From: Macrostomum lignano | Taxonomy: Eukaryota | Direction: 5' to 3' | NCBI GenBank assembly: GCA_002269645.1 | Contig: NIVC01001375.1 | Location: forward strand, 238,626 to 302,625 | DNA: 64,000 bases | Part shown: one piece after another, positions 24,401 to 61,879 of the stretch | Numbering within the stretch: position 1 is the first letter of the stretch | How the letters are laid out: each line of letters starts with the position of its first letter | Position numbers and translations under genes: made by a program | Notes under the pieces: generated by a model | Told to the model about the DNA's origin: nothing | Databases searched by the model: none | What the model saw: the letters and a program-made list of their open reading frames with translations, nothing else

Positions 24401-27400
24401 GCTATCGGACCCTGCTTGCTTGCGCTGAGACACTGACCTGGCATCTTTGGATTGTTGCTGCTTTTTTGTTGTTTGAGTTTTATTGGCTATGGCCAAGGAA
24501 CGCTGGGCAATGTGGACTGCTTTTTCTAGTGGCGTTGAAATCCATATTTTGTTTATTTCTCTCTCAATATTTGACTTATCGCTATCCAGTCGCTCTGATG
24601 TCATCTAGTCACTCTGATAACCGTAATCTAGTCACTCTGATGACCGTAATCTATTCACTCTGATAACCGTAATCTTGTCACTCTGATAACCGTAATCTAG
24701 TCACTCTGATAACCGTAATCTATTCACTATGATAACCGTAATCTAGTCACTATGATAACCGTAATCTAGTCACTCTGATAACCGTCATCTCTAGTCACTC
24801 TGATAACCGTCATCTAGTCACTGATAATCGCCATCTTTTCACTCTAACTGTCGCTATCTTGTCACTCTGATAGCCGCCATCTTGTCACTCTGATAGCCGC
24901 CATCTTGTCACTCTGATAACCGTCATCTAGTCACTCTGATGACCGTAATCTATTCACTCTGATAACCGTAATCTTGTCACTCTGATAACCGTAATCTAGT
25001 CACTCTGATAACCGTAATCTATTCACTATGATAACCGTAATCTAGTCACTATGATAACCGTAATCTAGTCACTCTGATAACCGTCATCTCTAGTCACTCT
25101 GATAACCGTCATCTAGTCACTGATAATCGCCATCTTTTCACTCTAACTGTCGCTATCTTGTCACTCTGATAGCCGCCATCTTGTCACTCTGATAGCCGCC
25201 ATCTTGTCACTCTGATAACCGTCATCTAGTCACTCTGATGACCGTAATCTATTCACTCTGATAACCGTAATCTTGTCACTCTGATAACCGTAATCTAGTC
25301 ACTCTGATAACCGTAATCTATTCACTATGATAACCGTAATCTAGTCACTATGATAACCGTAATCTAGTCACTCTGATAACCGTCATCTCTAGTCACTCTG
25401 ATAACCGTCATCTAGTCACTGATAATCGCCATCTTTTCACTCTAACTGTCGCTATCTTGTCACTCTGATAGCCGCCATCTTGTCACTCTGATAGCCGCCA
25501 TCTTGTCACTCTGATAACCGTCATCTAGTCACTCTGATAACCGTCATCTAGTCACTCTGATAACCGTCATCTAGTCACTCTGATAACCGTCATCTAGTCA
25601 CTCTGATAACTGTCATCTAGTCACTCTGATAACCGTCATCTAGTCACTCTGATAACCGTCATCTAGTCACTCTGATAACTGTCATCTAGTCACTCTGATA
25701 ACTGTCATCTAGTCACTCTGATAACCGTCATCTAGTCACTCTGATAACCGTCATCTTGTCACTCTGATAGCCGCCATCTAGTCAGTCTGATAATTGGCTG
25801 ACTTATGTTATTTACCTTCTTTAATTTACTAACTGATTTATCCAGAAATTGAATGCCACAGTTCAAATTAATTTTGCACCGCCGTTTATGAATTATGGCT
25901 TTGATTGCTAAATTATTTGATTTATAAATAAATTAAATTACGCTTGCAATTGGTGTACAGTAGTTTTAGTAAAATATAAGTACGGAATTGAGTATTAAAT
26001 TTCATTGTTAAAATATTTTTTTCATTTCAGGGTCACCGCGACTCGCCGCAGCCTGCCGGCGACGCACCAGTTAAAGGCGGACTGGTTAGTATCTGTTTTT
26101 TTAATACTGTTACAGTTCTGTAGATTCTTATGCCAAATTGTTTTATAATGTACTATTGTTATTTGTAACCTATATTGAGTGTCTTCTACTTAGCATAGAG
26201 TAGGCACGAAGCGCAATATAATTATAACACTACTGTTTACTAGTGCCTGTCCTACTCTCTACTTGTGTCTATTCTACTCTAGTCCTATCTATTGTACTCT
26301 ACACTTGTGTCTATTCTACTCTGCACTTGTGTCTATTCTACTCTAGTCCTATCTATTCTACTCTGCACTTGTGTCTATTCTACTCTAGTCCTATCTATTC
26401 TACTCTGCACTTGTGTCTATTCTACTCTAATCCTATCTATTCTACTCTAGTCCTATCTATTCTACTCTGCACTTGTGTCTATTCTACTCTAATCCTATCT
26501 ATTCTACTCTAGTCCTATCTATTCTACTCTAGTCCTATCTATTCTACTCTGCACTTGTGTCTATTCTACTCTAATCCTATCTATTCTACTCTCTACTTGT
26601 GTGTATTCTACTCTAATCCTATCTATTCTACTCCAGTACTACGAGTATACTCGTATCTATTCTACTCTGCACTTGTGTCTATTCTACTCTAGTCCTATCT
26701 ATTCTACTCTGCACTTGTGTCTATTCTACTCTGCACTTGTGTCTATTCTACTCTGCACTTGTGTCTATTCTACTCTGCACTTGTGTCTATTCTACTCTGC
26801 ACTTGTGTCTATTCTACTCTAGTCCTATCTATTCTACTCTGCACTTGTGTCTATTCTACTCTAGTACTATCTATTCTACTGTCTACTTGTGTCTATTCGA
26901 CTCTACTCGTATCTATTCTACTGTAATAAAACTGGTTATCACACGCGCTGAGTTCTCAGTATTCATCAGTTTCTCTAAATGCATTTTCATTCAGTGCCAG
27001 GTGTGCAAGTACTACAATAAAGCCTCTATATACATATCGGCCTTCATTCGCCTGCTCGGCTCGTGTGTTACTCCCTTCCCCCATACCTTGCTGTTCTCAA
27101 TACCGAGAGCTCAATTCTAAGCGCCCAGTCTTTTACTACTAGACCTCGTGCACAGGGCAAAACCTATTCTATCGCTATGATATTCTCTCCTTCTCTTCTT
27201 CCTCTAGTGTCTCTCGACTGGCTCTTGCTCTCTTCTGCAGCTTATTTAATGTGCAATACGCTCTAGTGTTTCTGTCTAGTATATTATTTCTTCTCTAGCT
27301 AGCTCATTTCTATCTTGTACGTATTTGTAATTTAGATGTGTTTGATCTGAGGTCGGAACTGCGGCAAGATTTTCTAAGTAAGCTTCTTGCAATCTCTTCT

Positions 27401-30400
27401 TTTCCAAATAGTATACTCACGTACGAGTGATCGAGGTTAAATACTCTCACGTTCTCAGCAGCTGTGCAACCTTCCCAGATTCTCGGTTGCTGGGCCAGCC
27501 TTCCAGAGTGTCAGTTGCTGGGCCAGCCTCCCAGATCCTCAGTTGCTGGGCCAGCCTCCCAAATCCCCAGTTGCTGGGCCAGCCTCCCAGATCCTCAGTT
27601 GCTGGGCCAGCCTCCCAGATCCTCAGTTGCTGGGCCAGCCTCCCAGATCCTCAGTTGCTGGGCCAGCCTCCCAGATCCTCAGTTGCTGGGCCAGCCTCCC
27701 AGATCCTCAGTTGCTGGGCCAGCCTCCCAGATCCTCAGTTGCTGGGCCAGCCTCCCAAATCCCCAGTTGCTGGGCCAGCCTCCCAGATCCTCAGTTGCTG
27801 GGCCAGCCTCCCAGATCCTCAGTTGCTGGGCCAGCCTCCCAGATCCTCAGTTGCTGGGCCAGCCTCCCAGATCCTCAGTTGCTGGGCCAGCCTCCCAGAG
27901 TGTCAGTTGCTGGGCCAGCCTCCCAGATCCTCAGTTGCTGGGCCAGCCTCCCAGGGTGTCAGTTCCTGGTCCAGCCTCCCAGATCCTCAGTTGCTGGGCC
28001 AGCCTCCCGGATCCTCAGTTGCTGGGCCAGCCTCCCAGAGTGTCAGTTGCTGGGCCAGCCTCCCAGAGTGTCAGTTGCTGGGCCAGCCTCCCAGATCCTC
28101 AGTTGCTGGGCCAGCCTCCCAGATCCTCAGTTGCTGGGCCAGCCTCCCAGATCCTCAGTTGCTGGGCCAGCCTCCCAAATCCCCAGTTGCTGGGCCAGCC
28201 TCCCAGATCCTCAGTTGCTGGGCCAGCCTCCCAGATCCTCAGTTGCTGGGCCAGCCTCCCAGATCCTCAGTTGCTGGGCCAGCCTCCCAGAGTGTCAGTT
28301 GCTGGGCCAGCCTCCCAGATCCTCAGTTGCTGGGCCAGCCTCCCAGATCCTCAGTTGCTGGGCCAGCCTCCCAGATCCTCAGTTGCTGGGCCAGCCTCCC
28401 AAATCCCCAGTTGCTGGGCCAGCCTCCCAGATCCTCAGTTGCTGGGCCAGCCTCCCAGATCCTCAGTTGCTGGGCCAGCCTCCCAGATCCTCAGTTGCTG
28501 GGCCAGCCTCCCAGATCCTCAGTTGCTGGGCCAGCCTCCCAGATCCTCAGTTGCTGGGCCAGCCTCCCAGATCCTCAGTTGCTGGGCCAGCCTCCCAGGG
28601 TGTCAGTTCCTGGTCCAGCCTCCCAGATCCTCAGTTGCTGGGCCAGCCTCCCGGATCCTCAGTTGCTGGGCCAGCCTCCCAGGGTGTCAGTTCCTGGTCC
28701 AGCCTCCCAGATCCTTAGTTGCTGGGCCAGCCTTCCAGATTTTCAGTTGCTAGGGACCACCCTCTGAGCTTTTCAGTCCACTTTATCTAAAACAAAGCGT
28801 CCCTAGACTGGTAAATCCATAGTGCTTATCCTTCAGAGCGCACTTTCATTCCACAGAGCGGCAGCCAATCCTCTCTGCCTCCGCCGCCACCCGAGCTGGT
28901 GTCAGCCGGTCCCCAGTCAGCCCTGCCAGCCCCAGTGTCGGACATCAGCCGCAAGCCCAGCATGCAGCAGCAACAGCAACAGGATTCCCAATCAGCTGAT
29001 CAGTCGAATCGAATCCGTCAGCTAACTGGCGAGGTTGAACGGCTCAACGCCGAGTTAGAAGGCGCCCGTCACGTCTACAAAGAATTCGAACGATGCATGC
29101 AACAGATGGCTGAGCAAAAACGGCGCTCCGATCAGCAGGTTGCTGAGATTGTTAGAGATCGAGACCAGGTGCGATGCTACTCATTTTTCAATTTAGTGAA
29201 TCAATAATAGTGGAAAAAACCCTGTGGCGTTTTAGAAATGGAATTCCGTATACGCTTATAGAAGGAAATCCTTGTTTGATATTAAAAATTCAAGATAATG
29301 TTAATTACAGTACTCTTGAAATAGGAACAGATTATTCCAGCAAGGGAATCATAAGCCGTCTAAAAATAGAAACGGATTATTCTAGCAAAGGAATCCTCAT
29401 CTGCCGTCTAAAAATAGAAACTGATTATTACAGCAAGGGGAAATCCTCAGTGTTCTTAAAATAGAAACTGATTATTCCAGCAAGGGGAAATCCTCAGTGT
29501 TCTTAAAATAGAAACTGATTATTCCAGCAAGGGGAAATCCTCAGCGGTCTTAAAATAGAAACTGATTATTCCAGTAAGGGGAAATCCTCAGCGGTCTTAA
29601 AATAGAACCTGATTATTCCAGCAAGGGGAAATCCTCAGTGTTCTTAAAATAGAAACTGATTATTCCAGCAAGGGGAAATCCTCAGTGTTCTTAAAATAGA
29701 AACTGATTATTCCAGCAAGGGGAAATCCTCAGTGTTCTTAAAATAGAACCTGATTATTCTAGCAAGGGGAAATCCTCAGTGTTCTTAAAATAGAAACTGA
29801 TTATTCCAGCAAGGGGAAATCCTTAGCGGTCTTAAAATAGAAACTGATTATTCCAGCAAGCGGAAATCCTCAGTGTTCTTAAAATAGAAACTGATTATTC
29901 CAGCAAGGGGAAATCCTCAGCGGTCTTAAAATAGAAACTGATTATTCCAGCAAGGGGAAATCCTCAGCGGTCTTAAAATAGAAACTGATTATTCCAGCAA
30001 GGGGAAATCCTCGGTGTTCTTAAAATAGAAACTGATTTTTCCAGCAAGGGGAAATCCTCAGTGTTCTTAAAATAGAAACTGATTATTCCAGCAAAGGGAA
30101 ATCCTCAGTGTTCTTAAAATAGAAACTGATAATCAGGAAAATCCATCCAATCTTTCTAAAAATCGAACTCATGGATGCCAAGGTTACACCTGTTCGTTAC
30201 GTTCAACAGTATGGGGGCATATAAATAATTATTACGATGAAGAGGCAACAGGGAATCCCCATCGCACTCTCGCAGGCGCTGGAAGACCTCCGCTCAGTGG
30301 AGAAGGCATTCTCCGATCTGCACCGCCGGTTTGAGAAATCCAAACTGCTAGTCGAAGCGCACAAGAAGAACGAAGAGACGCTGAACAAGTGCGTGCAGGA

Positions 30401-32493: not shown

Positions 32494-35400
32494 ATGTCAA
32501 TTCGAATTAATGAAGACGAGGAAGGTTCGCCATTGCTGGCTGGTGTATATTCTGATGCTACTTCAGCTGCACTCCAGAATGAAAGCAATTCGTAAGTTTC
32601 GTACAGGTTAATGTTTCCTTTTTTGATTAAAAAGTAGTAGTATAAGAAATAAAAAACTATAAAACCCTATGCTATCTATATCTTTTTTTAGTTTTTTTGA
32701 ATCGTAGGCCCCCTATCTTGGAGAGTATGCTAAAATGATCTACTTGTCTGTAAAATAAAGAACAAACTTGTTCTGTAAAGTTTTAACTTAACAATTATTT
32801 TTTTAGATCAGTGTCAATCAACAGGAGTCCAACTGATGAAACCTACCGATGGAAGTCGATTAGACTTTGTTACTTGACATTCTTTATATCTAGCTTGGGT
32901 TTTTCAATTTGTTTGTCTTCAATTTGGCCATATCTGCAACAAGTAAGTTAAAGAATCTTTAAATATTTGTGTTATTTTATTTGGATCAAAATATTATCAA
33001 GTTTATATTTTATTATTTCATGTTAGAAAAGACTGACAAATACAAAATATTTATTATAACTATGTAAATATCATTGATTTTAAATCAAAATTAAAACTTA
33101 TTTTTATTAAGACAAAAATACTAGAGTTTGACTTTTTTAATTCTATTAAGATGCTCCAAAATCAGTTACAGAGGCAGTGTTTTTATATATAATAATAAAT
33201 TCTAGCCTTTTTATTCTAAATTATCTTTGTGTATACTATTTTTAAATAATCAACCAAAGTTCAGATTTTATATTTAGTTAAATTAGGTTTGTTTTAAATA
33301 GGCACTGGTTCAAATTGTTAAATTAACTTAGCAAACCATAATAATAATGCATTAATTTCCACTTTCAAACAGGTGGACACTGAATCAAATGAAGCCTTCC
33401 TAGGCTGGGTGGTAGCCGCCTTCAGCTTGGGCCAACTGATCGCCAGCCCAATCCTTGGCTTGCTATTCAATGTGATGAAGCAGGCCAGAATCCCTATTCT
33501 AATCTCCCTAGTGATCAGCCTATTTGGCAGCGCTCTATACGCTTATGTACACATATTCCCAACCAATCGCAGATTTGTACTATTAGTGGCCCGCTTTGTC
33601 ATTGGTCTCGGCGCTGGAAATGGCGCCGTGATTAGAAGTTTCGTGTCTGGCGCCACCACGGTGGCCGAGCGCACTGAAGTGATGGCCAAAGTGTCCATCT
33701 GTCAGTCGCTGGGGTTTATTGTTGGCCCTGCGGTGCAGGCTGTGTTCACGCTACTGGGCTATCCTGGCCCTGTGCATGGCGCTGCGCTACAGATCAACAT
33801 GTACACCTCTGCCGGGCTGCTGTCCTTTCTCATGGGTGAGCTCATCCTCTAAACCGCTTCTAACTCTCCCCTGCGCCCCTCTCACTAATTCAAATTGTAG
33901 TTTCTTTCATTTTCACTTTCAATTACAGCTATCGGAAACATCGTTTTGATTGCTGTCTTCTTCAAAGAGTTCTTTTTCGAGACTGACACGATGGACAGAT
34001 CTTTGGCTAATCCGGCTAGCATCAGTGAGTTTTTAGCAGTGCTTTGCGGTTGTTTGCTGTCGGTGATATTATCGACTTCATTTTTTACCACAACAAAAAG
34101 ATCCTCAGTTGCTGGGCCAGCCTCCCAGATCCCCAGTTGCTGGGCCAGCCTCCCAGATCCCCAGTTGCTGGGCCAGCCTCCCAGATCCTCAGTTGCTGGG
34201 CCAGCCTCTCCGATCCTCAGTCTCCCAGACTCCTAGATGCGATCTTCAAACTTCTTCATCACTGGAAGCGCCATCTCATTGCAGACTCGGATGCAGCTGA
34301 GCAACTCCAGCATCAGCAGACAGACAGCCAGACCAAGCCGGACACTTTGGCTGCCCTCATCTGCATCTTCACGTTCTGCGTTCTGTTTTTCAACTTTTCA
34401 ACACTGGAAACGTGAGTTTATAGGTTTTAGAGCAGCTGTTCAAAATTGCCTGTAAAATATTCAGTGAATTTTCTGTGCTCTTAGTTCAACAGAACCTCAA
34501 GAATATTCATTGTAATCATTGCTTCTTACACCATATGTTGCTAACTGAAATTGCATTAAGGCGAAGACAAGACTAGATTAAAAAAACATTTTTTTGATAA
34601 GCCAGTTAAGCCTATGGACTTTAATAATTGATATGATACGCTTCTTTCTTGCGTCAAGAACTTTGACTATGCCAGTGTAGTAGGACTTTCATTTTGGCAA
34701 TGCGTCTTATCTTAAATTTATGGCATTCTGCCTGTAGCTGCACCGCTTTCACTGCTGCATTGCAGTATCATGACCCCGCTGAGTCAGGTCATGTTCGCCT
34801 GGAATAAGGAGCAGGCATCGCTGTACAATGGCATCGCTCTGGCCGTCTGCGGCTTCATCTCCATGGTGTCTTTTATATCTATTAGGTGCTGGACTAAAAT
34901 GTGAGTGATAAGATAAATTGATGGATAGATAGATATCAGCAGATAGATATCAGCAGATAGATCAGCAAATAGAGCAGCAGATAGATCAGCAAATAGATCA
35001 GCAGATAGAGCAGCAGATAGTTCAGCAGATAGATCTGCAGATAGATTAGCAGATAGAGCAGTAGATGGATCAGCAAATAGATCAGCAGATGATAAATCAG
35101 CAGATAGATCAGCAGATAGATCAGCTAATAGAGTAGCAGATAGATCAGCAGATAGATCAGCAGATAGATCAGCAGATAGATCAGCAGATAGATCAGCAGA
35201 TAGATCAGCAGATAGATCAGCAGATAGATCAGCAGATAGATCAGCAGATAGATTAGCAGATAGACCAGCAGATAGATCGGCAGCTAGATCAGCAGATAGA
35301 TCAGCAGATAGATCAGCAGATAGATTAGCAAAAATATCAGCAGATAGATCAGTAAATAGAGTAGCAGATAGATCAGCAGATAGATCTGCAGATAGATCAG

Positions 35401-37023
35401 CAGATAGAGCAGCAGATAGTTCAGCAGATAGATCAGCAGATAGAGCAGCAGATAGATAAGCAAATAGATCAGCAGCCACCCCTTCCCCACCCAGCCTGAC
35501 GGAGAACGATTTGATAGTGGCCGCCCTGACCCTGACCTTCGCGGCCTTCATGCTGCTGACCCCGTGGGTCGGACTGCCGGCCCCGCTGAGCCAGGTCATA
35601 GGTCAGATAGATTAGCAAAAATATCAGCAGATAGATCAGTAAATAGAGTAGCAGATAGATCAGCAGATAGAGCAGCAGATAGATCAGCAGATAGAGCAGC
35701 AGATAGTTCAGCAGATAGATCAGCAGATAGAGCAGCAGATAGATAAGCAAATAGATCAGCAGCCACCCCTTCCCCACCCAGCCTGACGGAGAACGATTTG
35801 ATAGTGGCGGCCCTGACCCTGACCTTCGCGGCCTTCATGCTGCTGACCCCGTGGGTCGGACTGCCGGCCCCGCTGAGCCAGGTCATAGGTCAGATAGATT
35901 AGCAAAAATATCAGCAGATAGATCAGTAAATAGAGTAGCAGATAGATCAGCAGATAGAGCAGCAGATAGATCAGCAGATAGAGCAGCAGATAGTTCAGCA
36001 GATAGATCAGCAGATAGAGCAGCAGATAGATAAGCAAATAGATCAGCAGCCACCCCTTCCCCACCCAGCCTGACGGAGAACGATTTGATAGTGGCCGCCC
36101 TGACCCTGACCTTCGCGGCCTTCATGCTGCTGACCCCGTGGGTCGGACTGCCGGCCCCGCTGAGCTCCTACTTCATCGTCAACGGCACCGCCAGCGACGA
36201 CAGCGCCGGGCTGCCGATTCGAGTCGAGGACCACTCAGGCGGCTGCTCGCCAGCTCTGCCCTGGTGCTACCGAGTGCCTGCGGTAAAACTGCCCCTGGCA
36301 ATTCTGGCCATCGCTGTGCACTCAGTTGGCTATCCTATCGCCATAGTGCTGGCGCCCTCCGTGCTCACGAAAATTCTTGGCCAAATTCGACAAGTGAGTG
36401 ATAATTTATAGATGATTCATAGACAGAGATATGACCTCATTTAAACAATATGTACGCTCATGAGTCATTTACAGAGATATGATCTCATTTGAACAATCTG
36501 TGCACTCATGATTCATAGACAGATATGTGACCTCATTTGAACAATCTGTACACTCATGAGTCATAGACAGATATGTGACCTCATTTGAACAATATGTACA
36601 CTCACGAGTCATAGACAGAGATATGACCCCATTTAAACAATCTGTACAGGCATGAGTCATAGACAGAGATATGACCCCATTAAAATAATCTGTACAGTCA
36701 TGAGTCATAAACAGAGATATGACCTCATTAAAATAATCTGTACACTCATGAGTCATAGACAGAGATATGACCCCATTTAAACACAGGGCGTGTGGATGGG
36801 CCTGCTCACAGGCGGGGGCAGCTTGGCTCGCTGCATCGGCCCCATAGTGGTGAGCCTTCTATTCTCCGGCTACGGACCGCAAGCCTCTTTTCTAACCAGT
36901 TCAGGCCTCGTCCTACTCAGCCTGATCGCCGTTGTCGCGTTCGCTAAACGACTCGTACCGTTCGACGTTTATCGGATGCGAAGAATGCGCCTAGGCGGCT
37001 ACGGGACCTACGCCGAGATCTGA
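32494..37023 (+). CDS. MFSD8: MFSD8/CLN7-like lysosomal MFS protein, ~554 aa; exons 32494-32591, 32807-32942, 33373-33835, 33929-34024, 34237-34411, 34766-34900, 36069-36393, 36787-37023
   Basis: N-terminal EEGSPLL dileucine motif, [62 protein letters not shown] and [24 protein letters not shown] phases sum to 1665 nt (555 codons). Confidence 0.93.
34099..34232 (+). repeat. Short array of the same 28-bp unit in MFSD8 intron 4, abutting the acceptor at 34236
   Basis: AGATCC(T/C)CAGTTGCTGGGCCAGCCTCCC, ~4.5 copies. Confidence 0.92.
34925..36050. repeat. 12-bp GATAGATCAGCA minisatellite plus a 287-bp triplication containing the exon-7 acceptor and first ~97 nt of exon 7 (MFSD8 intron 6)
   Basis: CCACCCAG|CCTGACGGAG begins at 35495, 35782 and 36069, an exact 287-bp spacing. 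Confidence 0.93.
36405..36786. repeat. 48-bp minisatellite x8 filling MFSD8 intron 7
   Basis: The TGA(C/T)C(T/C)CATT motif recurs at 36432, 36480, 36528, 36576, 36624, 36672, 36720 and 36768. Confidence 0.92.
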
Positions 37024-38887: not shown

Positions 38888-41504
38888 TCATTCAGATTTC
38901 ATTCGCAGAGGCTGAACCCAGATCATCAACTGGGCCAAGGGCAGTATAGCTGCTAGGCCGCCAATGCTGTAGCTTAAAGTCGGACCGTAGAGCCAGAAAG
39001 CTGAAAAAATCAATAAAATACGCAAGTCTGCAAGTAACTTGATAGCCTTAAGAGTACAAGTAGACAGTAATGATTTTTATAACTAACTTTTAAAAGATTT
39101 TTCAATTATCTATTATATCAGTTATTCACCCCATAAGAACCCCATTTAAAGCCTATTTAGTAATTTTTTTTATTTCTACTTTCAGAATACTGCAAGTAGG
39201 CAAGCAGCGAATTTTATTAACAAATTATTACACTTGAATTGATAGCTTACTGCAAGTAGGCAAGCTACGAATTTTATTAAAATTTTATTTATAGCTTACT
39301 GCAAGTAGGCAAGCTACGAATTTTATTAAAATTTTATTTATAGCTTACTGCAAGTAGGCAAGCATCGAATTTTATTAAAATTTTATTTATAGCTTACTGC
39401 AAGTAGGCAAGCATCGAATTTTATAACCCAAACCCAAACTTACCAAGCGAAGCAAACAGTGGACCGACAGCTCGAGCCAACGAGCCCAAGGATCTGAGCA
39501 CGCCAAGCGCTTGACCCTGCGACTCGGGCGGAGCCAGCTGCGACAGCATAGCGGTCAGAGCTGGCACGGGACAAGCGGAGCACATTGAGAATAACAATAC
39601 GCCAATGTAGAAGACCGATTGGCCAGTTGCATTGCCTAGCAACAAGCCGGCCGGGCACAGAGCGGCAATGGCTAAGCTGGCCAGTTTGAGCTCCGAACCA
39701 GCTCGAATCCGACGAACCAAGCCGCCTTGAAGGAGGGCGCTGGTCACGCCGATGCACAGAAACATGACGCCCTGCTGGCCCCGGCTGAATCCCAGGCGTA
39801 GGTGGGCCAAGAATGGCAGCGTGAACTCCAGGCCAGAGAATAGCGTTAGGAATAGAAAATACACCAGGGCGATGTGGCGCATCTGACCTCGCTCTGGAAG
39901 CGATTGTGTACATGAAACTGGCATTGATGTGCTATCGATTATAGTAGCATTCACAGGTGAGATTCACAATGTGATTCACTGTGATTCACGCATCCTTAAC
40001 GATGAGGTTCACACATTCTTCACGACTAGATTCTCACATTCTTCACGACTAGATTCACACATTTTTCCAATGTGATTGACACATGATTCGCACATTATTC
40101 ACGATGAGATTCGCTCATTCTTTACTATCAGGTTCACACATTCTTCACGACTAGATTCTCACACATTCTTCACAATGAGATTCACACATTTTTCCCAATG
40201 TGATTGACACGTGATTCGCACATGATTCACGATGAGATTCGCTCATTCTTTACTGTGAGGTTCACACATTCTTCACGACTAGATTCACACATTTTTCCCA
40301 ATGTGATTGACACATGATTCACGATGAGATTCGCTCATTATTTACTGTAAGGTTCACACATTCATCACAATGAGATTCACAAATTCTTTATACTATGAAG
40401 TTCACACATTCTTTACAGTGAGATTTACTCATTCTTTACTGTGAGGTTCACACATTCTTTACAGTGAGTTTCACACATTCTTTACTATGAGGTTCACACA
40501 TGCTTCACGATGCGATTCACGCATCCTTCACGATAAGATTCACACATTTTTCACAATGCGATTCACACATTTTTCACGATGACATTCGCAGATAGATTCA
40601 CCGATGCATCATAGGTTATTTTCAACTTTAAGTTACAAACAAATATAATTAAGCCATCCGCACTCCATACTACTCACCAAACTGCCCAGCAGTAGGCATC
40701 GCGTCAAACGCAAACAATCGAGCAGGATTTAACAGTACAGCAGCTCGGCTCACAGCTGCTGCGCCGCCGCCGCGGCCGCCCGACCCTCGCCGACAAGTCT
40801 CCGGCAGTTTGAGTCGAGCAACCAGCAGGGCAGCAGCTGCCAGCACCAGGGCCAGCACAGCCGGGTAAGCAAAATTGCCAGCCGAATTCGATCTCAAGCT
40901 CTGCGCCAAGAATGCGCCCAGAGCCGGGCCAGTTGAGAAAGCCAAGCTGAACGCCAAGCCAATCCACAGCATTCCTCTGCCGCGATGGTCCGCGTCTGAA
41001 GCGTCGCTAACTGCGGCGGTGCACACGGTGACGCTGCAACGGGCCAGGCCGGCTAAAACTCTCGAGGCTAGAAAAACCGCGAACGAAGCGGAGGACAGGG
41101 CCCACAGGGTGTACGCTGCGGCTGTGCCTACTAGGGACAGGGTTAGCACTGGCAGTCTGCCAATAGCATCTGACAGACCGCCGGCCAATGGCGCCGATAT
41201 GAACTGCAGCACAGAGAACAGGGAGCCGAGAAGGCCTCCAAGCAGGACCGAGTCCCAGCTTCTCTCCTGCTGCTGGCCGCTTAGGGCTGCCGGCTGCAGG
41301 TCCGGGATGCCCAGGCTGATGCGGAAGCGCTGAGATGTGCGCTTGAACTCGTTGAACAGCTGGTCCTGCGGGATGGGGGGTGGAGTCATCGCTATACACT
41401 TGGAAAGACAGACAGACAGACAGGCAGAAGGCAGACAGACAGGCAGACAGACACATAGACAGACAGACAGAAAGACAGACAGACAAACAAACACACAGAC
41501 AGAC

Positions 41505-41569
<65 letters not shown>

Positions 41570-41570
41570 C

Positions 41571-41641
<71 letters not shown>

Positions 41642-41664
41642 GTCAGACAGACAGACAGACAGTC

Positions 41665-41701
<37 letters not shown>

Positions 41702-41731
41702 CACAGACAGACAGACAGAAAGACAGACAGG

Positions 41732-41765
<34 letters not shown>

Positions 41766-41766
41766 C

Positions 41767-41821
<55 letters not shown>

Positions 41822-41839
41822 GTCAGACAGTCAGACAGT

Positions 41840-41877
<38 letters not shown>

Positions 41878-41934
41878 AACACACAGACAGACAGACAGAC
41901 AGTCAGACAGACAGACAGACAGACAGACAAACAC

Positions 41935-41973
<39 letters not shown>

Positions 41974-41974
41974 C

Positions 41975-42013
<39 letters not shown>

Positions 42014-42056
42014 AACAAACACACAGACAGACAGACAAACACACAGACAGACAGAC

Positions 42057-42149
<93 letters not shown>

Positions 42150-42358
42150 CCGACAGGCAAGCAACTCACATCCCCCATCGCAGCGAAGTGATCCAGTATG
42201 GAGGGGAACAGCGGCAGGATCAGTGTGAAGCCCAGCAAATCCAACAGCAAGGTGAAGAACACGGCTGTGAAAACTGATTTCCGTGTAGCGGCGGAGGCGG
42301 CAGCGCCATCGGCAGTGCCAGTTGACTCTGCAGTCATGCTGCGGGTAACAGCTGGCAT
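38888..42358 (-). CDS. MFSD10: MFSD10/TETRAN-like MFS transporter, ~479 aa; exons 42358-42170, 41365-40678, 39893-39444, 39000-38888
   Basis: [66 protein letters not shown] and [24 protein letters not shown] phases sum to 1440 nt. Confidence 0.93.
39188..39422. repeat. 49-bp minisatellite x~5 in MFSD10 intron 3
   Basis: GCTTACTGCAAGTAGGCAAG at 39245, 39294, 39343 and 39392. Confidence 0.9.
39955..40605. repeat. Degenerate ~22-bp minisatellite (GATTCACACATTCTTCACGAT) filling MFSD10 intron 2
   Basis: Direct reading. Confidence 0.85.
41405..42150. repeat. (GACA)n, i.e. (TGTC)n in gene sense, filling MFSD10 intron 1
   Basis: Direct reading. Confidence 0.95.
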
Positions 42359-42677: not shown

Positions 42678-43060
42678 AGGATCTGGGAAGCTGGCCCAGC
42701 AACTGGGGATCTGGGAGGCTGGCCCAGCAACTAGGGATCTGGGAAGCTGGCCCAGCAATTGAGGATCTAGGAGGCTGGACCAGGAGTTGAGGATCTGGGA
42801 GGCTGGCCAAGCAACTGGGGATCTGGGAAGCTGGCCTAGCAACTGGGGATCTAGGAGGCTGGCCCAGCAACTAGGGATCTGGGAAGCTGGCCTAGCAATT
42901 GAGGATCTGGGAAGCTGGCCTAGCAACTAGGGATCTAGGAGGCTGGCCCAGCAACTAGGGATCTGGGAAGCTAGCCTAGTAATCTGCTGATCTGGGAGGA
43001 TGGCCTAGCAACTGAGGATATAGGAGGGCAGCCTAGCAATTGAAAATCTAGGAGGCTAGT
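42678..43060 (-). repeat. Third, more diverged array of the 28-bp family, upstream of MFSD10
   Basis: The + strand reads GGATCTGGGAGGCTGGCCCAGCAACT(G/A)GG, the reverse complement of the unit. Confidence 0.9.
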
Positions 43061-43599
43061 CTAGATTTTATATGCTATACAAAAATTTTCTTAATTTAGC
43101 TTTATCTTCTTAAGATTCCTGCTTAGCACAGAGGGTTTATTATCACTGATTGATCATTTATAATATATTGGTCAATGGTCATAATGTATTAGTATTAAAT
43201 ATTGAATTTACTTGCAGACTTTGCTATAGTGCAAAGGAAAATCAATACATAAAGCATAGCAGTATAAATAGTAAACATAGTCTTTTTGCCTATATTAAAA
43301 ACATGTTATTGTTAAACAATCAGAATTTTTAAGTACAATTAAATTGACTCATTCTGATTACTCATGACATGATTAAAAATCAACTATACAATAGTAATCA
43401 TAAATCACAACTATTTTGGATGGGGTATAAATTAAAACAGCTAATCCAGTAATCCTCAACAAAAAGTGAAACAATGCATTTAAAATTTTGCATTAAAAAA
43501 GGCCTTTGCACATAAATTTGGTTGAGTAAAAATTTGGTTATTATAATATTTTTGTCTGCACCTATACATTATAGGCATTTTTGTTTGGGAGCCATATGT

Positions 43600-56200: not shown

Positions 56201-58769
56201 TCCCTTCCCCTCCCTTCCTCTCTCCCTTCCCCTCCCTTCCTCTCTCCCTTCCTCTCCCTTCCTCTCCCCTTCCTCTCCCTTCCTCTCCCTTCCTCTCCCT
56301 TCCTCTATCTCTTCTTCTCCTCTCTCCCTTCCTCTCTCCCTTCCTCTCTCACGTCCTCTCTCCCTCCCTTCCTCCTCTCTCCTCCCTTCCTTCTTACCTT
56401 CATTTCCCCTTTCACTCTATCATTCCCTCCCTCTCTCCCAAGGTAGAGCTGGAGACAGAGCTTGGGTCAGTGCCACTAGAAGCTTCCGCAGACTACCACA
56501 CCTGCCGCCCAGCGTCAGCGCACGGCTGATGAATCTAATAGCAATTATCCACTGACTTGCGGCTGGCAGCTTCTTCAGGAAAATTGATTGATAATCTGAA
56601 ACCTACTACAATAACTGCGGCGACAATTGGGCTGGGTTAATTAACCTCTCGAATCTCTAAGAAATCGCCTAGAAACCGCAAATTGCGGGTCAGTGGTTAT
56701 GGTCTGACAAAAACAAAAATCAAAGATCTTGAAAGCTTGAAGTGATTATTTGATGAAATTAGTTTTAGGCTGACCAAACTGCAACTGACTGACCTGATTG
56801 ATTGATGGATTAACGACTCCAACCAAAGCAATTTTCTAAGAAACCGCCTGTTGAATCCGTCGAATGGGAGAGCAATTTTTTGTTTGGTTAAAATTGCCAG
56901 AAGACAATTTGGGCAGAACAAACATTGACAAGACTAAGAAATCTGAATAATTTCTTTAACTTTCGCCTCCCTCTTGAAAACTTTCGCCCTGAAGGGTTGG
57001 GCACTTCAGTGCTGGCCCACGGCAGCTAATGAATGATCATTCTTGCTGGAATATGGGCTGGAATTTCCATCGGCAGGCGATAGAAGAAAATCTTTCAACG
57101 CTCAAGTGGTTGTTCTGGGCTCCCGCTGACCGACTGGAGCCATCAGAAAGTTTGATGAAGCTCAGAAATATGGGGAGAGAAATGACCTGGTGTTTGCTTT
57201 CCTTCTCCTGACTGTCAGCTGGGAACTGCTGTTCCACTATGGGCACTGATTGCAAACAGAGAAATCCAGTTTGTTAATTTCATTTAGTGAGGTCTGAACT
57301 CATTCAGGTGGTCTGAACTCATTCAGGTGGTCTGAACTCATTTAGGGTGTTTTAACTCCTATAGGGTGTCCTCAACTCCCTCAGGGTGTTTTAACTCACT
57401 CAGAGTGTCTTAACTCACTCAGGGTGTCCCAACTCCCTCAGGGTGTCCTGAACTCACTCAGGGTGTCCTGAACTCACTCAGGGTGTCCTGAACTCACTCA
57501 GGGTGTCTTAACTCACTCAGGGTGTCTCAACTCACTCAGGGTGTCTCAACTCCCTCAGGGTGTCCTCAACTCCCTCAGGGTGTCCTCAGCTCCCTCAGGG
57601 TGTCCTGAACTCACTCAGGGTGTCTTAACTCACTCAGAGTGTCTTAACTCACTCAGGGTGTCTCAACTCACTCAGAGTGTCTTAACTCCCTCAGGGTGTC
57701 TCAACTCCCTCAGGGTGTCCTGAACTCACTCAGGGTGTCCTGAACTCACTCAGGGTGTCCTGAACTCACTCAGGGTATCCTGAACTCACTCAGGGTGTCC
57801 TGAACTCACTCAGGGTGTCCTGAACTCACTCAGGGTGTCTTAACTCACTCAGGGTGTCCTCAACTCCCTCAGGGTGTCCTCAGCTCCCTCAGGGTGTCCT
57901 GAACTCACTCAGGGTGTCTTAACTCACTCAGAGTGTCTTAACTCACTCAGGGTGTCTCAACTCACTCAGAGTGTCTTAACTCCCTCAGGGTGTCTCAACT
58001 CCCTCAAGGTGTCCTGAACTCACTCAGGGTGTCCTGAACTCACTCAGGGTGTCCTGAACTCACTCAGGGTGTCCTGAACTCACTCAGGGTGTCCTCAACT
58101 CCCTCAGGGTGTCCTCAACTCCCCCAGGGTGTCTCAACTCCCTCAGGGTGTCTCAACTCACCCAGGGTGTCTCAACTGGCGTCCCAACCATCACACCGAC
58201 CTCCCCATCAGGTGAAAATTTGGTTCCAAAACCGGCGCTACAAGGTGAAACGCCAACAAGCCGACAAGTCTGTGGAGCTGCAGGCCGCGGCCTACAACCA
58301 GTGCCGGTTCCCAGTCAGCAGCAGCTTGCTTCGCGAAGCCATTGCCTCCTCTGCAGCCGTCTCCGACCACGTCGACAGCGGCGGCGGCGACGGCGGCGGC
58401 CAGGCGTCGGGCAGTTTCGGCAGCTACGCAAGCGCAACCGCGGCGGCCATGGCGGCGGCAGCGGCGGCGGCGGCGGCAGCGGCGGCTGCGTCGGTTTCAG
58501 TCGCCGAATCGTCGACAACAACTTCGGGTAGCGACGCGGAGGCTGTTGCAACTTCCGCGTCGGTCAACAACAAGCTGGTCGAAACTGACGCTCTTCATCA
58601 ACAGCATCCGTATTTGAGCAGCCAGCAGCCGCCTCCACCGCCGCCTCCATACCACCAGGCCGTGTCTGCGGCGGCCGCCATGCAGCATCATCAGCATCAT
58701 CAGTATTCAACAGGTGTCCCCGCCTATTCAGGTGCTGCAGCAGTTCACCATCTGGGTTGTCAGTGGTAG
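50271..58769 (+). CDS. NK4: NK2-class homeobox gene, NK4/tinman/NKX2-5-like, ~643 aa; exons 50271-50616, 52016-53043, 58212-58769
   Basis: Homeodomain [44 protein letters not shown]|[15 protein letters not shown] has the NK2-diagnostic Tyr54 and the NK4-type RKPR..QNRRYK. DKSVEL follows the homeodomain and the protein ends in W. Phases 1 and 0 sum to 1932 nt. Confidence 0.88.
50643..51930. repeat. 22-bp then 19-bp minisatellite (CACCTGGGATTAGAAATGA) filling NK4 intron 1
   Basis: Direct reading. Confidence 0.95.
53047..53322. repeat. 12-bp GTGCTAGAGGGT minisatellite starting at the intron-2 donor
   Basis: Direct reading; produces the VLEG tail of ORF 52033..53235. Confidence 0.93.
53885..55100. 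repeat. Two GA-rich low-complexity tracts (53885-54360 and 54915-55100) in NK4 intron 2
   Basis: Direct reading. Confidence 0.9.
55093..55405. repeat. 39-bp minisatellite x8
   Basis: GAGAATGAGACAGAAGAGACAGTGAGAGCTGCTGTGAGA, period 39. Confidence 0.93.
56075..56440. repeat. CT-rich polypyrimidine repeat
   Basis: Direct reading. Confidence 0.9.
57290..58180. repeat. 20-bp minisatellite AACTCACTCAGGGTGTCCTG ending ~30 nt before the exon-3 acceptor
   Basis: Direct reading. Confidence 0.95.
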
Positions 58770-59600: not shown

Positions 59601-61879
59601 CGCAAGAACTTTTTAGCCATTTAAATGTTTAGAACTTTTCGTCGGATTATTGATTTAAAATATTTATTGATCTATTTTGCAAATTGCAACGCACATTTTA
59701 ACTAAGCAGTTGCGCTATATGAGGCTAAATTAACATACTTTGTGTAAATTAATTTTTCTGACCATAAAAAAACGAATTTTGCTGTTACATGTACATGTAT
59801 CTGCATGATGACTTGATTGTAAACTGCACCCTCTTGCTTGAACTTTTGTTATAATGTAGTAATTTCTATACAGACCTAGCTGTTCTCAATTACGTGTTCA
59901 TGTGCATGTACAGTATGCTAAAAGCACTGTACGTTTATCTCAAAACTATCTCCTACTATGCAGTGAATGTTTGCAGTTATAAAAAATATCATATAAATGT
60001 ATGTATATAAAAATGGTTTATACATGTCTTAATTAATTGACATGATCCCGTTACATGTATTTCTCAAATCGTGTAAAGATGTCAGTGTTGTTTGATAAAT
60101 GCCATTGGTTTGCATGTGCTGTAAATATAATATACTACTTATACAAGTAGCAATAAATACATGTAATACCATGCATTGCATATGCAGCAGTATTAATACA
60201 CTGTACACTATATGAATTGCTTTGACTTTGAATTCGAAATTTGATGACCTCAATTAAGGTTAAAGTTTGACTAACAGCTAGAGACCAAACTAGCTGGATT
60301 CACACTGGATTCTAATCGAAAACGAAAAATTATAACGAAAAAATCCCTTTTGCTATAGGGAAACAGCCTTTTTAAAAAAATTGAGCCGTACGTATATATC
60401 TCTGCACAGAACGCCTCAGAATGTCCTCCCCTAAATCTTTTTCTATTGGTCTCAATTGTACTCTTATTGTACATGTAACTTTATAGCCAGCACAGCTTTA
60501 CTGTGTAACCCGGCCTTACTGTGTACCTGTACCTGCACAAAACGCTGCAGGCCATACCGGCGAGGACAGGCGCACAATCGGCGTTTTGTCGACTGCATGC
60601 GTAGCGGACCGCACCTAATTGTCCTAGGACTGTTATGAACAATTACCCCATCAATTAGTAGAACAGTAAAGGAAAAATTTAACCAAATTTAACAAAAAAA
60701 TACATAGTTACAGGAAGTCACGAACGTTCTATGCAGGGCACACCTGCACTTATATGAGCGACAGTTAAACGAAAAAAATAGTAAAACAAACGATTTAGGT
60801 TAATAATGTAGTAAATGTTTTATATATAACAAGACGCATAAAAAATAATCTTATAAAATTATTAAGTATAAATCTTTCTTAAGTATTTTATTTGTTAAAT
60901 TCATGAGTAATCAAAGCTTGGTATTAAAATTTGAAATTGTGACTAATTTTTTTCGAATGGAATTTTCATATGTGCATGTTCTTCGTCGTGACTCGTGCTT
61001 TAGTGCTGTAGCCTGTAGTACATCACTGATTCACTGTACATGTGTTGTGTTGACAGCTTTGACAGTCACAGCGGCGTTGGGAGGGGGGATGTTGGGATGT
61101 ATTCCCCCGAATAGCCTAAAAAAGTTTCGTCTGTTTTCTAGCAATTTCTTATTTCTTTTTCGTTTTTGTTCTCCATAGACCATAGGGGATGATAAGGCCG
61201 GCCAAGGCGGCCTTAACCTCCTAACCCGATAAAAACTTTTGGCGGCCTATTGGCGGCTTTTGGCTAGCCTTCTAAATTTTATTGATTTATCAATTTTTGT
61301 TTTGCATTTTATTAACAACAGCTAATGCCTAAAGCTACTGACTAGGGTTTTGCAATAGACATTTGCTTGGTAATAATTTATTATTAATGATGATACCAAA
61401 ATTTCCTTGCAGAAAGGGATACACTTGATCAGTTTCAGTTTCTTTTTAGTAATCCTAGGTCTAGACTTTTTAGTGCATTATCCTTTGCCTTTGGCTTTGT
61501 TTTAGCTATAAATATCTAAGTAGCTTAGCTGTCTGTAGCCCTAGGCCTAGCTATTCAGAAACTTTTAATGCTTAATGTACTTTTTGTTTATTGGTAGCTA
61601 TATATATATATTTATCGATTAAGGTAAAATTGTAACCTTATTTTTACTTTATAAAATAATTACTTGTTTGTAATAGAGCATCTGTTTTTTATCTAATATT
61701 TAAAGAAAGATATTTTAGTTATTTAAAATCAATATTCTTTTTTATATAAGAAATTGTTATTAAATAAATAAATAAAACTAAATGTTTGTTTAAAACTTTT
61801 TTACAAAAAATCAGAAAATTCTAATCTAATGAAAAATATTATAATAAAAAATAATATATAAAGTGTCTTTGCCTGCTCA

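What the first reader, a model, noticed from the sequence alone, without database searches (positions are those of the whole stretch)
35315..36393. Exact 287-bp triplication gives MFSD8 three identical exon-7 acceptors, with a junction resembling exon 6
Seen: acceptor plus the first 97 nt of exon 7 start at 35495, 35782 and 36069; only the third continues as the full exon, and copy 2 has one synonymous difference (GCG vs GCC). The truncated copies end CCCCGCTGAGCCAGGTCAT, 18/19 identical to exon 6 (34774-34792), whereas true exon 7 continues CCCCGCTGAGCTCCTAC. This suggests a microhomology template switch. Read-through of copy 1 or 2 stops at ..LSQVIGQID*. Two weak donors (CAG|GTCATA, TAG|GTCAGA) allow a 100-nt plus 107-nt inclusion that is stop-free and restores frame (+69 aa). 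Inference: a snapshot of decoy or poison exon birth by tandem duplication, or a broken allele.
Basis: partly seen in the sequence, partly recalled or inferred. Interest (0 to 1): 0.7.

Follow-up and report, generated by a model that had tools for sequence, protein, structure and literature searches.

The report
Young tandem triplication of splice acceptor
One of the three copies of the lysosomal transporter gene MFSD8 in the flatworm Macrostomum lignano carries a recent 287-bp tandem triplication. It repeats the end of intron 6 and the first 97 bases of exon 7, is a clear scar of DNA template switching, and has no shown effect on the gene.

Summary
Window 35317-36165 is a 287-bp unit present 3.0 times at 99% identity. 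This gives three identical exon-7 acceptors, at 35495, 35782 and 36069, and only the third continues as the full exon.

"Exact" is slightly overstated. Units 1 and 2 differ at three bases and units 2 and 3 at one.

The window is the last 64 kb of contig NIVC01001375.1 of the Macrostomum lignano assembly Mlig_3_7. The gene is a real MFSD8 relative. My 8-exon, 538-aa model equals GenBank PAA68713.1 exactly, so the deposited CDS uses the third acceptor.

The two other copies of the locus in the same assembly have a single acceptor and no junction. The event is therefore specific to this copy and younger than the split between the copies.

Both junctions carry the same 12-nt filler, whose first 8 nt copy exon 6 just after a shared 10-nt motif. 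That supports a microhomology-guided template switch, followed by one homology-driven expansion from two units to three.

The decoy or poison-exon reading is untested, since no reads or RNA data were reachable. This is an ordinary class of mutation in a very repeat-rich, triplicated genome, so interest is modest.

The parts
32494..37023 (+). MFSD8-like gene with 8 coding exons and a 538-aa product (GenBank PAA68713.1, BOX15_Mlig000144g2)
   Evidence: The model has GT-AG at every intron. Its translation is an exact match to PAA68713.1. The best named homologues are MFSD8, and Pfam gives MFS_1 at 1.7e-27.
34766..34900 (+). Exon 6, with donor AAAAT|gtgagt at 34900/34901
34774..34792 (+). Template motif in exon 6, CCCCGCTGAGTCAGGTCAT. 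It consists of 10 nt of microhomology with exon 7, then one T where the junction has C, then the 8 nt (CAGGTCAT) copied into the junction.
   Evidence: The same site reads C in paralogue L003, which gives a 19/19 match.
34935..35475 (+). 12-nt microsatellite (ATCAGCAGATAG)n that fills intron 6. The left breakpoint lies in its 3' part.
   Evidence: The same array is present at different lengths in both paralogues.
35317..35603 (+). Repeat unit 1, made of 178 nt of intron tail with the acceptor, 97 nt of exon 7 and a 12-nt filler
35495..35591 (+). Truncated exon-7 copy 1 (97 nt, encoding the ninth hydrophobic segment), behind decoy acceptor 1
35592..35603 (+). Junction filler 1, CAGGTCATAGGT. 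It contains the two candidate weak donors, CAG|GTCATA and TAG|GTCAGA.
35604..35890 (+). Repeat unit 2. It carries the private synonymous G at 35809.
35782..35878 (+). Truncated exon-7 copy 2, behind decoy acceptor 2
35879..35890 (+). Junction filler 2, identical to filler 1
35891..36165 (+). Repeat unit 3, the original copy. It runs on into the complete exon 7.
36069..36393 (+). Complete exon 7 (325 nt), with donor CGACAA|gtgagt. This is the acceptor used in the GenBank CDS.

Best explanation
This is a real, evolutionarily young structural variant in one of the three subgenome copies of MFSD8 in Macrostomum lignano.

**Step 1 (inferred from the junction).** DNA synthesis ran through the acceptor and the first 97 nt of exon 7.
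- The growing strand left its template and re-annealed about 0.8 kb upstream in exon 6, using the shared 10-nt motif CCCCGCTGAG.
- There it copied 8 nt (CAGGTCAT) and added 4 more (AGGT), possibly a re-copy of AGGTCA.
- It then re-annealed in the 12-mer microsatellite of intron 6 at the position now numbered 35317 and continued.
- The result was a 275-nt tandem duplication with a 12-nt patchwork filler.

**Step 2 (inferred).** Unequal exchange or slippage between the two 287-bp units added a third unit. This explains why both junctions are identical.

**Consequence (inferred, not shown).** The productive mRNA uses the third acceptor, which alone is followed by a complete exon and a consensus donor. 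The two upstream acceptors are sequence-identical competitors, and their use would be unproductive in nearly every case: a stop at ...LSQVIGQID*, or a frameshift. I expect the copy to be neutral or mildly weakened. It is tolerated because two other intact copies exist.
For: **Structure**
- The repeat structure is shown.
- The junction 19-mer matches exon 6 at 18 of 19 positions, against 0.01 matches expected by chance.
- The one mismatch is the base at the switch point. There the junction has C, which is exon 7's own next base (GAGC|TCC).
- Both junctions are identical, including the filler.

**Comparison with the paralogues**
- Paralogous loci L001 (NIVC01000013.1) and L003 (NIVC01000381.1) have one acceptor, one copy of the 97 nt and no filler.
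- CDS divergence gives the tree (window,(L001,L003)): 1.48% and 1.67% for the window against 0.56% between L001 and L003.
- Units differ by 1 in 275 and 3 in 287 bases. That is less than the genome-wide divergence of about 2.2% between copies (PMC10733133).
- All three units carry T at the site corresponding to 36085, where both paralogues have C. The extra units are therefore not paralogue sequence joined in by mistake.

**Gene state and context**
- The GenBank CDS equals the model that uses the third acceptor.
- Intron 6 is a fast-changing microsatellite: 701, 1168 and 1968 nt in the three loci.
- Tandem duplications of about 100 bp to 10 kb that show polymerase-theta end-joining hallmarks at their junctions, and patchwork templated insertions made by that pathway, are documented in C. 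elegans (PMC8654963).
Against: **Gaps in the evidence**
- No sequencing reads or transcripts could be examined, so neither copy number nor acceptor use has been checked independently.
- Mlig_3_7 is a Canu assembly of noisy PacBio reads, polished with Pilon, of a genome with three similar subgenomes. 36% of its assembly length lies in chimeric scaffolds (PMC5730564, PMC10733133).
- Polishing with multi-mapping reads could have created or erased the few differences between units, which weakens the age estimate.

**Features that fit the model less well**
- The template lies about 0.8 kb from the right breakpoint (about 0.5 kb from the left one), and the microhomology is 10 nt. Both are larger than is typical for polymerase-theta end joining. 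The exact pathway, fork-based switching or end joining, is therefore open.
- A crude U1-pairing energy does not separate the two filler donors from the gene's real donors. Pseudo-exon use cannot be dismissed on strength alone.
Confidence: 0.75

Rival explanations
1. The repeat is an assembly artefact. Either the whole duplication or the third unit was produced by the assembler or the polisher, and the real locus has one or two units.
For: The assembly is known to be redundant and partly chimeric. Paralogous blocks are sometimes misrepresented, and 93% of read pairs map to several loci. It was built with Canu 1.4 on PacBio reads and polished with Pilon using Illumina and RNA-seq reads. Look-ups for ORFs spanning the junction in other public assemblies found nothing.
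Against: - An assembler cannot invent a 12-nt filler whose first 8 nt copy a specific nearby exon, so at least one junction must exist in the reads.
- The array is 849 bp (35317-36165), far shorter than PacBio reads at 130x coverage.
- The units are not identical.
- The window has no N, and the array lies 27.8 kb from the contig end.
- All units carry the window-type T at the 36085 site rather than the paralogue C.
Confidence: 0.1
2. The copy is broken or strongly weakened. The first acceptor met by the spliceosome is used most of the time. Most transcripts of this copy then carry a stop after the ninth membrane segment (391 aa), or retain intron 6 through decoy-type interference. On this view the copy is on its way to being lost after genome duplication.
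For: - The three acceptors are identical from -178 to +97 apart from three point differences (two at about -110 in unit 1, one at +28 in unit 2), and the upstream ones are transcribed first.
- Read-through gives ...LSQVIGQID*.
- Two intact paralogues provide redundancy.
- Decoy splice sites inside introns are known to promote intron retention (PMC6097662, PMC7373989).
Against: - The CDS is intact, and differences from the paralogues are mostly synonymous. However, the event is too young for decay to show.
- The deposited transcript-guided model uses the third acceptor.
- From general knowledge of splice-site competition, a truncated exon without a good donor is a poor competitor when exons are recognised as units.
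Confidence: 0.15
3. The extra units are a selected regulatory device. On this view they work as poison or decoy exons, used to tune MFSD8 output or to make a +69-aa isoform.
For: Inclusion is possible on paper, and the 100+107-nt combination is stop-free and restores the frame. The crude U1-pairing energies of the filler donors fall within the range of the real donors.
Against: - The units are absent from both paralogues and very young, so nothing shows selection.
- Both filler donors have C at +3, which none of the gene's seven donors has.
- The +69-aa product would repeat a membrane segment and insert 35 out-of-frame residues into a 12-segment transporter.
Confidence: 0.04

Closest known systems
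Small tandem duplications made by microhomology-guided template switching (FoSTeS/MMBIR) or polymerase-theta end joining with templated 'patchwork' insertions (e.g. C. elegans helq-1 and brc-1 mutants, PMC8654963)
   Same: - It is a head-to-tail duplication within the reported size range of about 100 bp to 10 kb.
- There is microhomology at the switch points.
- The short filler is copied from nearby sequence and partly repeats itself (AGGTCAT/AGGTCAG).
   Different: - The microhomology is 10 nt and the template is about 0.8 kb away. Both are larger than typical for polymerase-theta joints and closer to fork-based switching.
- A second, homology-driven step made three units.
- This is a germline variant fixed in an assembly, not one seen arising in a mutant.
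Decoy exons and poison exons (SF3B1 intron 4 and OGT decoy exons, PMC6097662, PMC7373989, PMC12017769)
   Same: An intron contains exon-like pieces with a fully competent acceptor. Their use would be unproductive.
   Different: - Known cases are conserved and regulated, with use demonstrated experimentally.
- Here the pieces are days-old in evolutionary terms and absent from the paralogues.
- They have doubtful donors, and no expression data exist.
Human MFSD8/CLN7, the lysosomal MFS protein mutated in neuronal ceroid lipofuscinosis type 7
   Same: - It has about 38-40% identity over about 90% of its length to proteins named MFSD8.
- It has 12 hydrophobic segments.
- It has an N-terminal E-x-x-x-L-L motif.
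- The long loop after segment 9 has an N-x-T site and the conserved GC...WC residues.
   Different: It is a flatworm gene present in three subgenome copies. Its function and location in the cell have not been tested.

Membership tests
MFSD8 (CLN7) orthologue | Major facilitator fold with 12 membrane segments | tested here: met
   Pfam MFS_1 at E = 1.7e-27. A hydropathy scan finds 12 segments.
MFSD8 (CLN7) orthologue | Closest named relatives across animal phyla are MFSD8, not another MFS family | tested here: met
   The top named hits outside M. lignano are MFSD8 or MFSD8-like from molluscs, brachiopods, hemichordates and vertebrates, at E = 1e-106 to 1e-87. Against MFSD10 (PDB 6s4m) this protein reaches only 8e-07, whereas the neighbouring gene reaches 8e-33.
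MFSD8 (CLN7) orthologue | N-terminal acidic dileucine lysosomal sorting motif [DE]xxxL[LI]. That this feature is defining is recalled from the literature and was not checked here. | tested here: met
   Residues 10-15 read E-G-S-P-L-L.
MFSD8 (CLN7) orthologue | Long loop between segments 9 and 10 with a glycosylation site and conserved cysteines | tested here: met
   There is an N-G-T site at residue 390. G410, C411, W417, C418 and P422 are invariant in the alignment with MFSD8 proteins.
MFSD8 (CLN7) orthologue | Lysosomal location and transport or channel activity | not testable with these tools
   This needs cell biology.
Template-switch / microhomology-mediated tandem duplication | Direct head-to-tail repeat that is absent from the ancestral state | tested here: met
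   There are three units. Both paralogous loci are single-copy.
Template-switch / microhomology-mediated tandem duplication | Microhomology at the switch point | tested here: met
   CCCCGCTGAG is shared by the exon 7 breakpoint and exon 6. CA/CAG overlaps at the re-entry into the intron.
Template-switch / microhomology-mediated tandem duplication | Junction insertion copied from nearby sequence | tested here: met
   CAGGTCAT directly follows the shared motif in exon 6. The 19-mer has 0.01 chance matches expected in the window.
Template-switch / microhomology-mediated tandem duplication | Dependence on replication-fork switching or on polymerase theta | not testable with these tools
   This needs genetics.
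Poison / decoy exon | Inclusion or engagement seen in transcripts | not testable with these tools
   No RNA data were reachable. Neither protein search containing these 32 residues returned a protein ending in [10 protein letters not shown].
Poison / decoy exon | Use introduces a premature stop or a frameshift | tested here: met
   This holds for every combination tested except 100+107 nt in that order.
Poison / decoy exon | Competent splice sites on both sides | tested here: inconclusive
   The acceptors are identical to the real one. The donors GTCATA and GTCAGA have C at +3, unlike all seven real donors, yet their crude U1 duplex energies overlap those of the real donors.
Poison / decoy exon | Conservation in paralogues or other species | tested here: not met
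   The units are absent from L001 and L003.
False duplication in an assembly | Identical copies next to a gap or contig end, with no new junction sequence | tested here: not met
   The units differ at 3 bases. The window has no N. The array is 27.8 kb from the contig end. A new 12-nt filler is present twice.

The most novel reading that the evidence does not exclude
The two extra acceptors act as decoys that hold back or destroy a sizeable share of this copy's transcripts. That would make this an observable first step in copy-specific gene silencing after whole-genome duplication in M. lignano. It would also be a natural three-way competition between sequence-identical 3' splice sites, with the unit-2-specific G at 35809 as a built-in tag.
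Probability: 0.12. Interest if true: 0.55.

Novelty: new member of a known kind. Interest (0 to 1): 0.3.

Why it matters
**As a mutational scar.** The junction is unusually readable. The donor of the filler, the microhomology used and the unduplicated state in two sister copies can all be seen within one assembly.

**As a splicing test case.** If the triplication is real in the animals, it is a ready-made experiment on how a spliceosome chooses among identical acceptors. M. lignano has transgenesis, and RNAi as far as I recall.

**As a view of genome evolution.** It shows how repeat-filled introns can swallow an exon boundary, in a genome where indels dominate the differences between the three subgenomes.

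**For annotation.** Spliced reads shorter than 97 nt past the junction cannot tell the three acceptors apart. Quantification at this locus will be ambiguous.

None of this changes current understanding of MFSD8 or of splicing.

Tried and rejected
- **First protein search.** A search with only the C-terminal half found four distant fragments and missed the organism. The full-length model was needed.
- **Independent confirmation of the junction.** Exact look-ups of two minus-strand ORFs that span the junction found nothing in the public assemblies.
- **Third protein search.** I ran no further search on the junction peptide. Both earlier searches already contained the 32 duplicated residues and returned no protein ending in [10 protein letters not shown].
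- **Literature and supplements.** Searches for Mlig000144, Mlig003459 and MFSD8 in Macrostomum found nothing.
- **Older UniProt models.** A0A1I8HTA2, A0A1I8GXH1 and A0A1I8GIL7 (Macrostomum lignano entries held in UniRef only; as far as I recall they derive from the earlier ML2 assembly) each skip different in-frame pieces around intron 6. This includes the model matching the single-copy L001 type. I treat them as prediction errors, not as evidence about splicing.
- **Donor scoring.** Scoring donors by U1 duplex energy gave no separation.
- **Template in a paralogue.** I considered that the template was a C-bearing exon 6, as in L003, which gives 19/19. I set this aside: the tree makes T ancestral, and exon 7's own C explains the base.
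- **Filler from intron 7.** I considered that the filler came from the 48-nt minisatellite of intron 7. Only GTCATAG is shared, so I rejected it.
Full report
**1. What is in the sequence**

Positions 35317-36165 form a tandem array of a 287-bp unit, with 3.0 copies, 99% matches and no indels. The units start at 35317, 35604 and 35891.

Each unit has three parts:
- 178 nt of intron tail, made of 12-mer microsatellite plus the C-rich tract ccaccccttccccacccag;
- the first 97 nt of exon 7;
- in units 1 and 2 only, the 12-nt filler CAGGTCATAGGT (35592-35603 and 35879-35890).

Unit 3 runs on into the full exon 7. The units are near-identical rather than exact. Units 1 and 2 differ at 35385, 35387 and 35522/35809. 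Units 2 and 3 differ only at 35809, up to the breakpoint after offset 275.

The window has no N.

**2. The gene and the organism**

I built an 8-exon model with GT-AG at every intron: 32494-32591, 32807-32942, 33373-33835, 33929-34024, 34285-34411, 34766-34900, 36069-36393 and 36787-37023. It gives a 538-aa protein.

- That protein is identical, residue for residue, to GenBank PAA68713.1, 'hypothetical protein BOX15_Mlig000144g2' of Macrostomum lignano.
- It is encoded on NIVC01001375.1 of assembly GCA_002269645.1, Mlig_3_7.
- Locus L002 from that record is identical to window 22494-47023. The window is therefore the last 64 kb of that 302,625-bp contig.
- The deposited CDS uses the third acceptor, at 36069.

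The protein is an MFS transporter (Pfam MFS_1, 1.7e-27). Its best named relatives outside the species are MFSD8 or MFSD8-like proteins from molluscs, brachiopods, hemichordates and vertebrates, at 38-40% identity over about 90% of the length.

Other features fit MFSD8:
- It has 12 hydrophobic segments.
- It has an N-terminal E-G-S-P-L-L motif.
- The loop after segment 9 has an N-G-T site and invariant GC...WC residues.

The 32 residues encoded by the duplicated 97 nt contain the ninth hydrophobic segment.

**3. The paralogue comparison**

The same assembly holds two more copies of the locus:
- L001 on NIVC01000013.1 (protein PAA94182.1);
- L003 on NIVC01000381.1 (protein PAA84307.1).

In both, an MFSD10-like gene lies downstream on the opposite strand, as in the window. 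Both have a single acceptor, a single copy of the 97 nt and no filler.

Intron 6 is a 12-mer microsatellite in all three loci, but its length differs:

| Locus | Intron 6 length |
|---|---|
| L001 | 701 nt |
| Window | 1168 nt (594 nt without the two extra units) |
| L003 | 1968 nt |

CDS differences are as follows:

| Pair | Divergence | Synonymous / non-synonymous |
|---|---|---|
| Window vs L001 | 1.48% | 20 / 4 |
| Window vs L003 | 1.67% | 21 / 6 |
| L001 vs L003 | 0.56% | 7 / 2 |

The tree is therefore (window,(L001,L003)).

This fits the published picture of Mlig_3_7 as three paralogous subgenomes, S, L1 and L2. They differ by about 2.2% in SNPs overall and 1.1% in CDS, with most of their difference in indels (PMC10733133). 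By inference the window copy is the S copy; this was not tested.

All three units carry T at the 36085 site, where both paralogues have C. The extra units are therefore not paralogue sequence spliced in by a chimeric assembly.

**4. How it arose**

The truncated copies end CCCCGCTGAGC and continue CAGGTCAT. Exon 6 reads CCCCGCTGAGTCAGGTCAT at 34774-34792, nine bases after its acceptor.

- The 19-mer has one other match in the window, in exon 6, at up to 3 mismatches. Chance would give 0.01 matches.
- Given the shared 10-nt motif, the chance that the next 8 filler bases match those following the motif in exon 6 is about 4^-8.
- The single mismatch sits at the switch point. The junction has C, which is exon 7's own next base (GAGC|TCC).
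- L003 happens to have C at that site in exon 6, which gives 19/19. However, the tree makes T ancestral.

The remaining AGGT, read with the following CA, repeats AGGTCA from the copied piece. CA/CAG overlaps the point of re-entry into the intron.

This is the pattern of serial template switching guided by microhomology. It matches the documented polymerase-theta end-joining signatures: tandem duplications of about 100 bp to 10 kb, and patchwork templated insertions (PMC8654963). The 10-nt homology and the 0.8-kb jump suit a replication-fork mechanism better than classic end joining.

Both junctions are identical. The third unit is therefore best explained by unequal exchange or slippage between two existing units, not by a second independent switch.

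**5. Age**

The units differ by 1 in 275 and 3 in 287 bases. Two of the three are two bases apart in the microsatellite and may be a single event. That is below the divergence between the subgenome copies, which agrees with the absence of the array from L001 and L003.

One caveat applies. Pilon polishing with multi-mapping reads could have altered these few bases.

**6. Could it be an artefact?**

The assembly is noisy in origin: Canu 1.4 on PacBio reads at 130x, polished with Pilon. It is also redundant and partly chimeric.

Against an artefact:
- The filler, with its specific origin, must exist in the reads.
- The array is under 0.9 kb.
- The units differ from one another.
- There is no gap, and the array lies 27.8 kb from the contig end.

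I put about 10% on an error, mostly on the count (two units versus three) rather than on the duplication itself. I could not reach reads or another assembly. Exact look-ups of junction-spanning ORFs found nothing.

**7. Consequences for splicing (inference only)**

The three acceptors are the same from -178 to +97, apart from the three point differences listed in section 1. The possible outcomes are these:

| Splicing choice | Result |
|---|---|
| Acceptor 1 or 2, no further splicing | ...LSQVIGQID*, 391 aa, losing the loop and segments 10-12 |
| Pseudo-exon ending at CAG\|GTCATA (100 nt) | Frameshift |
| Pseudo-exon ending at TAG\|GTCAGA (107 nt) | Frameshift |
| 100 nt from unit 1 followed by 107 nt from unit 2 | Frame restored, +69 aa, 35 of them read out of frame |

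- A single 100-nt inclusion opens a long alternative frame whose stop lies in the last exon (546 aa). Such a transcript could escape exon-junction-dependent decay.
- All seven real donors of the gene are GTRAG. Both filler donors have C at +3.
- A crude U1 duplex energy does not separate the filler donors from the real ones. I leave donor strength open.
- From general knowledge of splice-site competition, an acceptor followed by a complete exon and a consensus donor is favoured. The transcript-guided annotation agrees.
- Spliced reads shorter than 97 nt past the junction cannot distinguish the three acceptors. The annotation is therefore weak evidence.
- Decoy-type interference leading to intron retention is a known possibility (PMC6097662, PMC7373989).

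**8. Verdict**

The functional reading is untested, and the lack of conservation speaks against a selected role.

This is a well-resolved example of a known mutation class, in one of three redundant gene copies of a genome where simple and tandem repeats make up 15%. It is not described in the searchable literature.

It is of modest interest, mainly as a natural test of acceptor competition and as a caution for annotation.

Noticed in passing
window 24602-25792, 35317-36165, 57313-58171, 61879-63190: Four of the eight tandem arrays with a period of at least 100 bp in the window have periods of 281-299 bp. They are built on unrelated basic units of 23, 12, 20 and 48 nt. The 299-bp order is also seen in paralogue L001 as BLAST offsets. 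A preferred size of about 290 bp for higher-order duplication in this genome is possible but unexplained.
   Followed up: partly
window 36163-36165 (right breakpoint): Two older UniProt models, A0A1I8HTA2 and A0A1I8GXH1, start exon 7 at the in-frame AG|C that coincides exactly with the right breakpoint. They skip precisely the 32 duplicated residues. One of them matches the single-copy L001 type. This is probably a prediction quirk, but the coincidence is unexplained.
   Followed up: partly
L003 12668-12686 (exon 6 of paralogue NIVC01000381.1): Exon 6 of this paralogue reads CCCCGCTGAGCCAGGTCAT, a 19/19 match to the window's junction. The window and L001 have T at that site.
   Followed up: yes
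window 27473-28764, 34099-34221, 42679-43064: A dispersed 28-nt minisatellite (AGATCCTCAGTTGCTGGGCCAGCCTCCC) lies upstream of the gene, inside MFSD8 intron 4 and, inverted, near the neighbouring gene. The long array is open in all three frames, giving false ORFs of 391-446 aa.
   Followed up: no
window 38888-42358 (- strand): The neighbouring gene is an MFSD10-like transporter (8e-33 to PDB 6s4m), annotated at 479 aa. A 744-bp (AGAC)n array at 41406-42149 lies inside it. A gene with a TACC C-terminal domain lies upstream of MFSD8 in the window and in L001. In L003 a Helitron-like gene and a gene with faint tyrosine-recombinase (Phage_integrase) hits lie within the 10 kb upstream instead.
   Followed up: partly
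window 36412-36783: Intron 7 of MFSD8 is almost entirely a 48-nt minisatellite with 7.8 copies. Nearly every intron of this gene is filled with tandem repeats.
   Followed up: no
window 35495-37023, +1 frame: The alternative frame of exons 7 and 8 is open, so a single 100-nt pseudo-exon inclusion gives a 546-aa frameshifted ORF. Its stop lies in the last exon, so it might not trigger exon-junction-dependent mRNA decay.
   Followed up: partly
protein search behaviour (vs 14): A query of 242 residues that is identical to part of PAA68713.1 and PAA94182.1 did not retrieve them. The full-length query did. The word prefilter can miss even identical proteins, so a negative result from that tool is weak evidence.
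   Followed up: no
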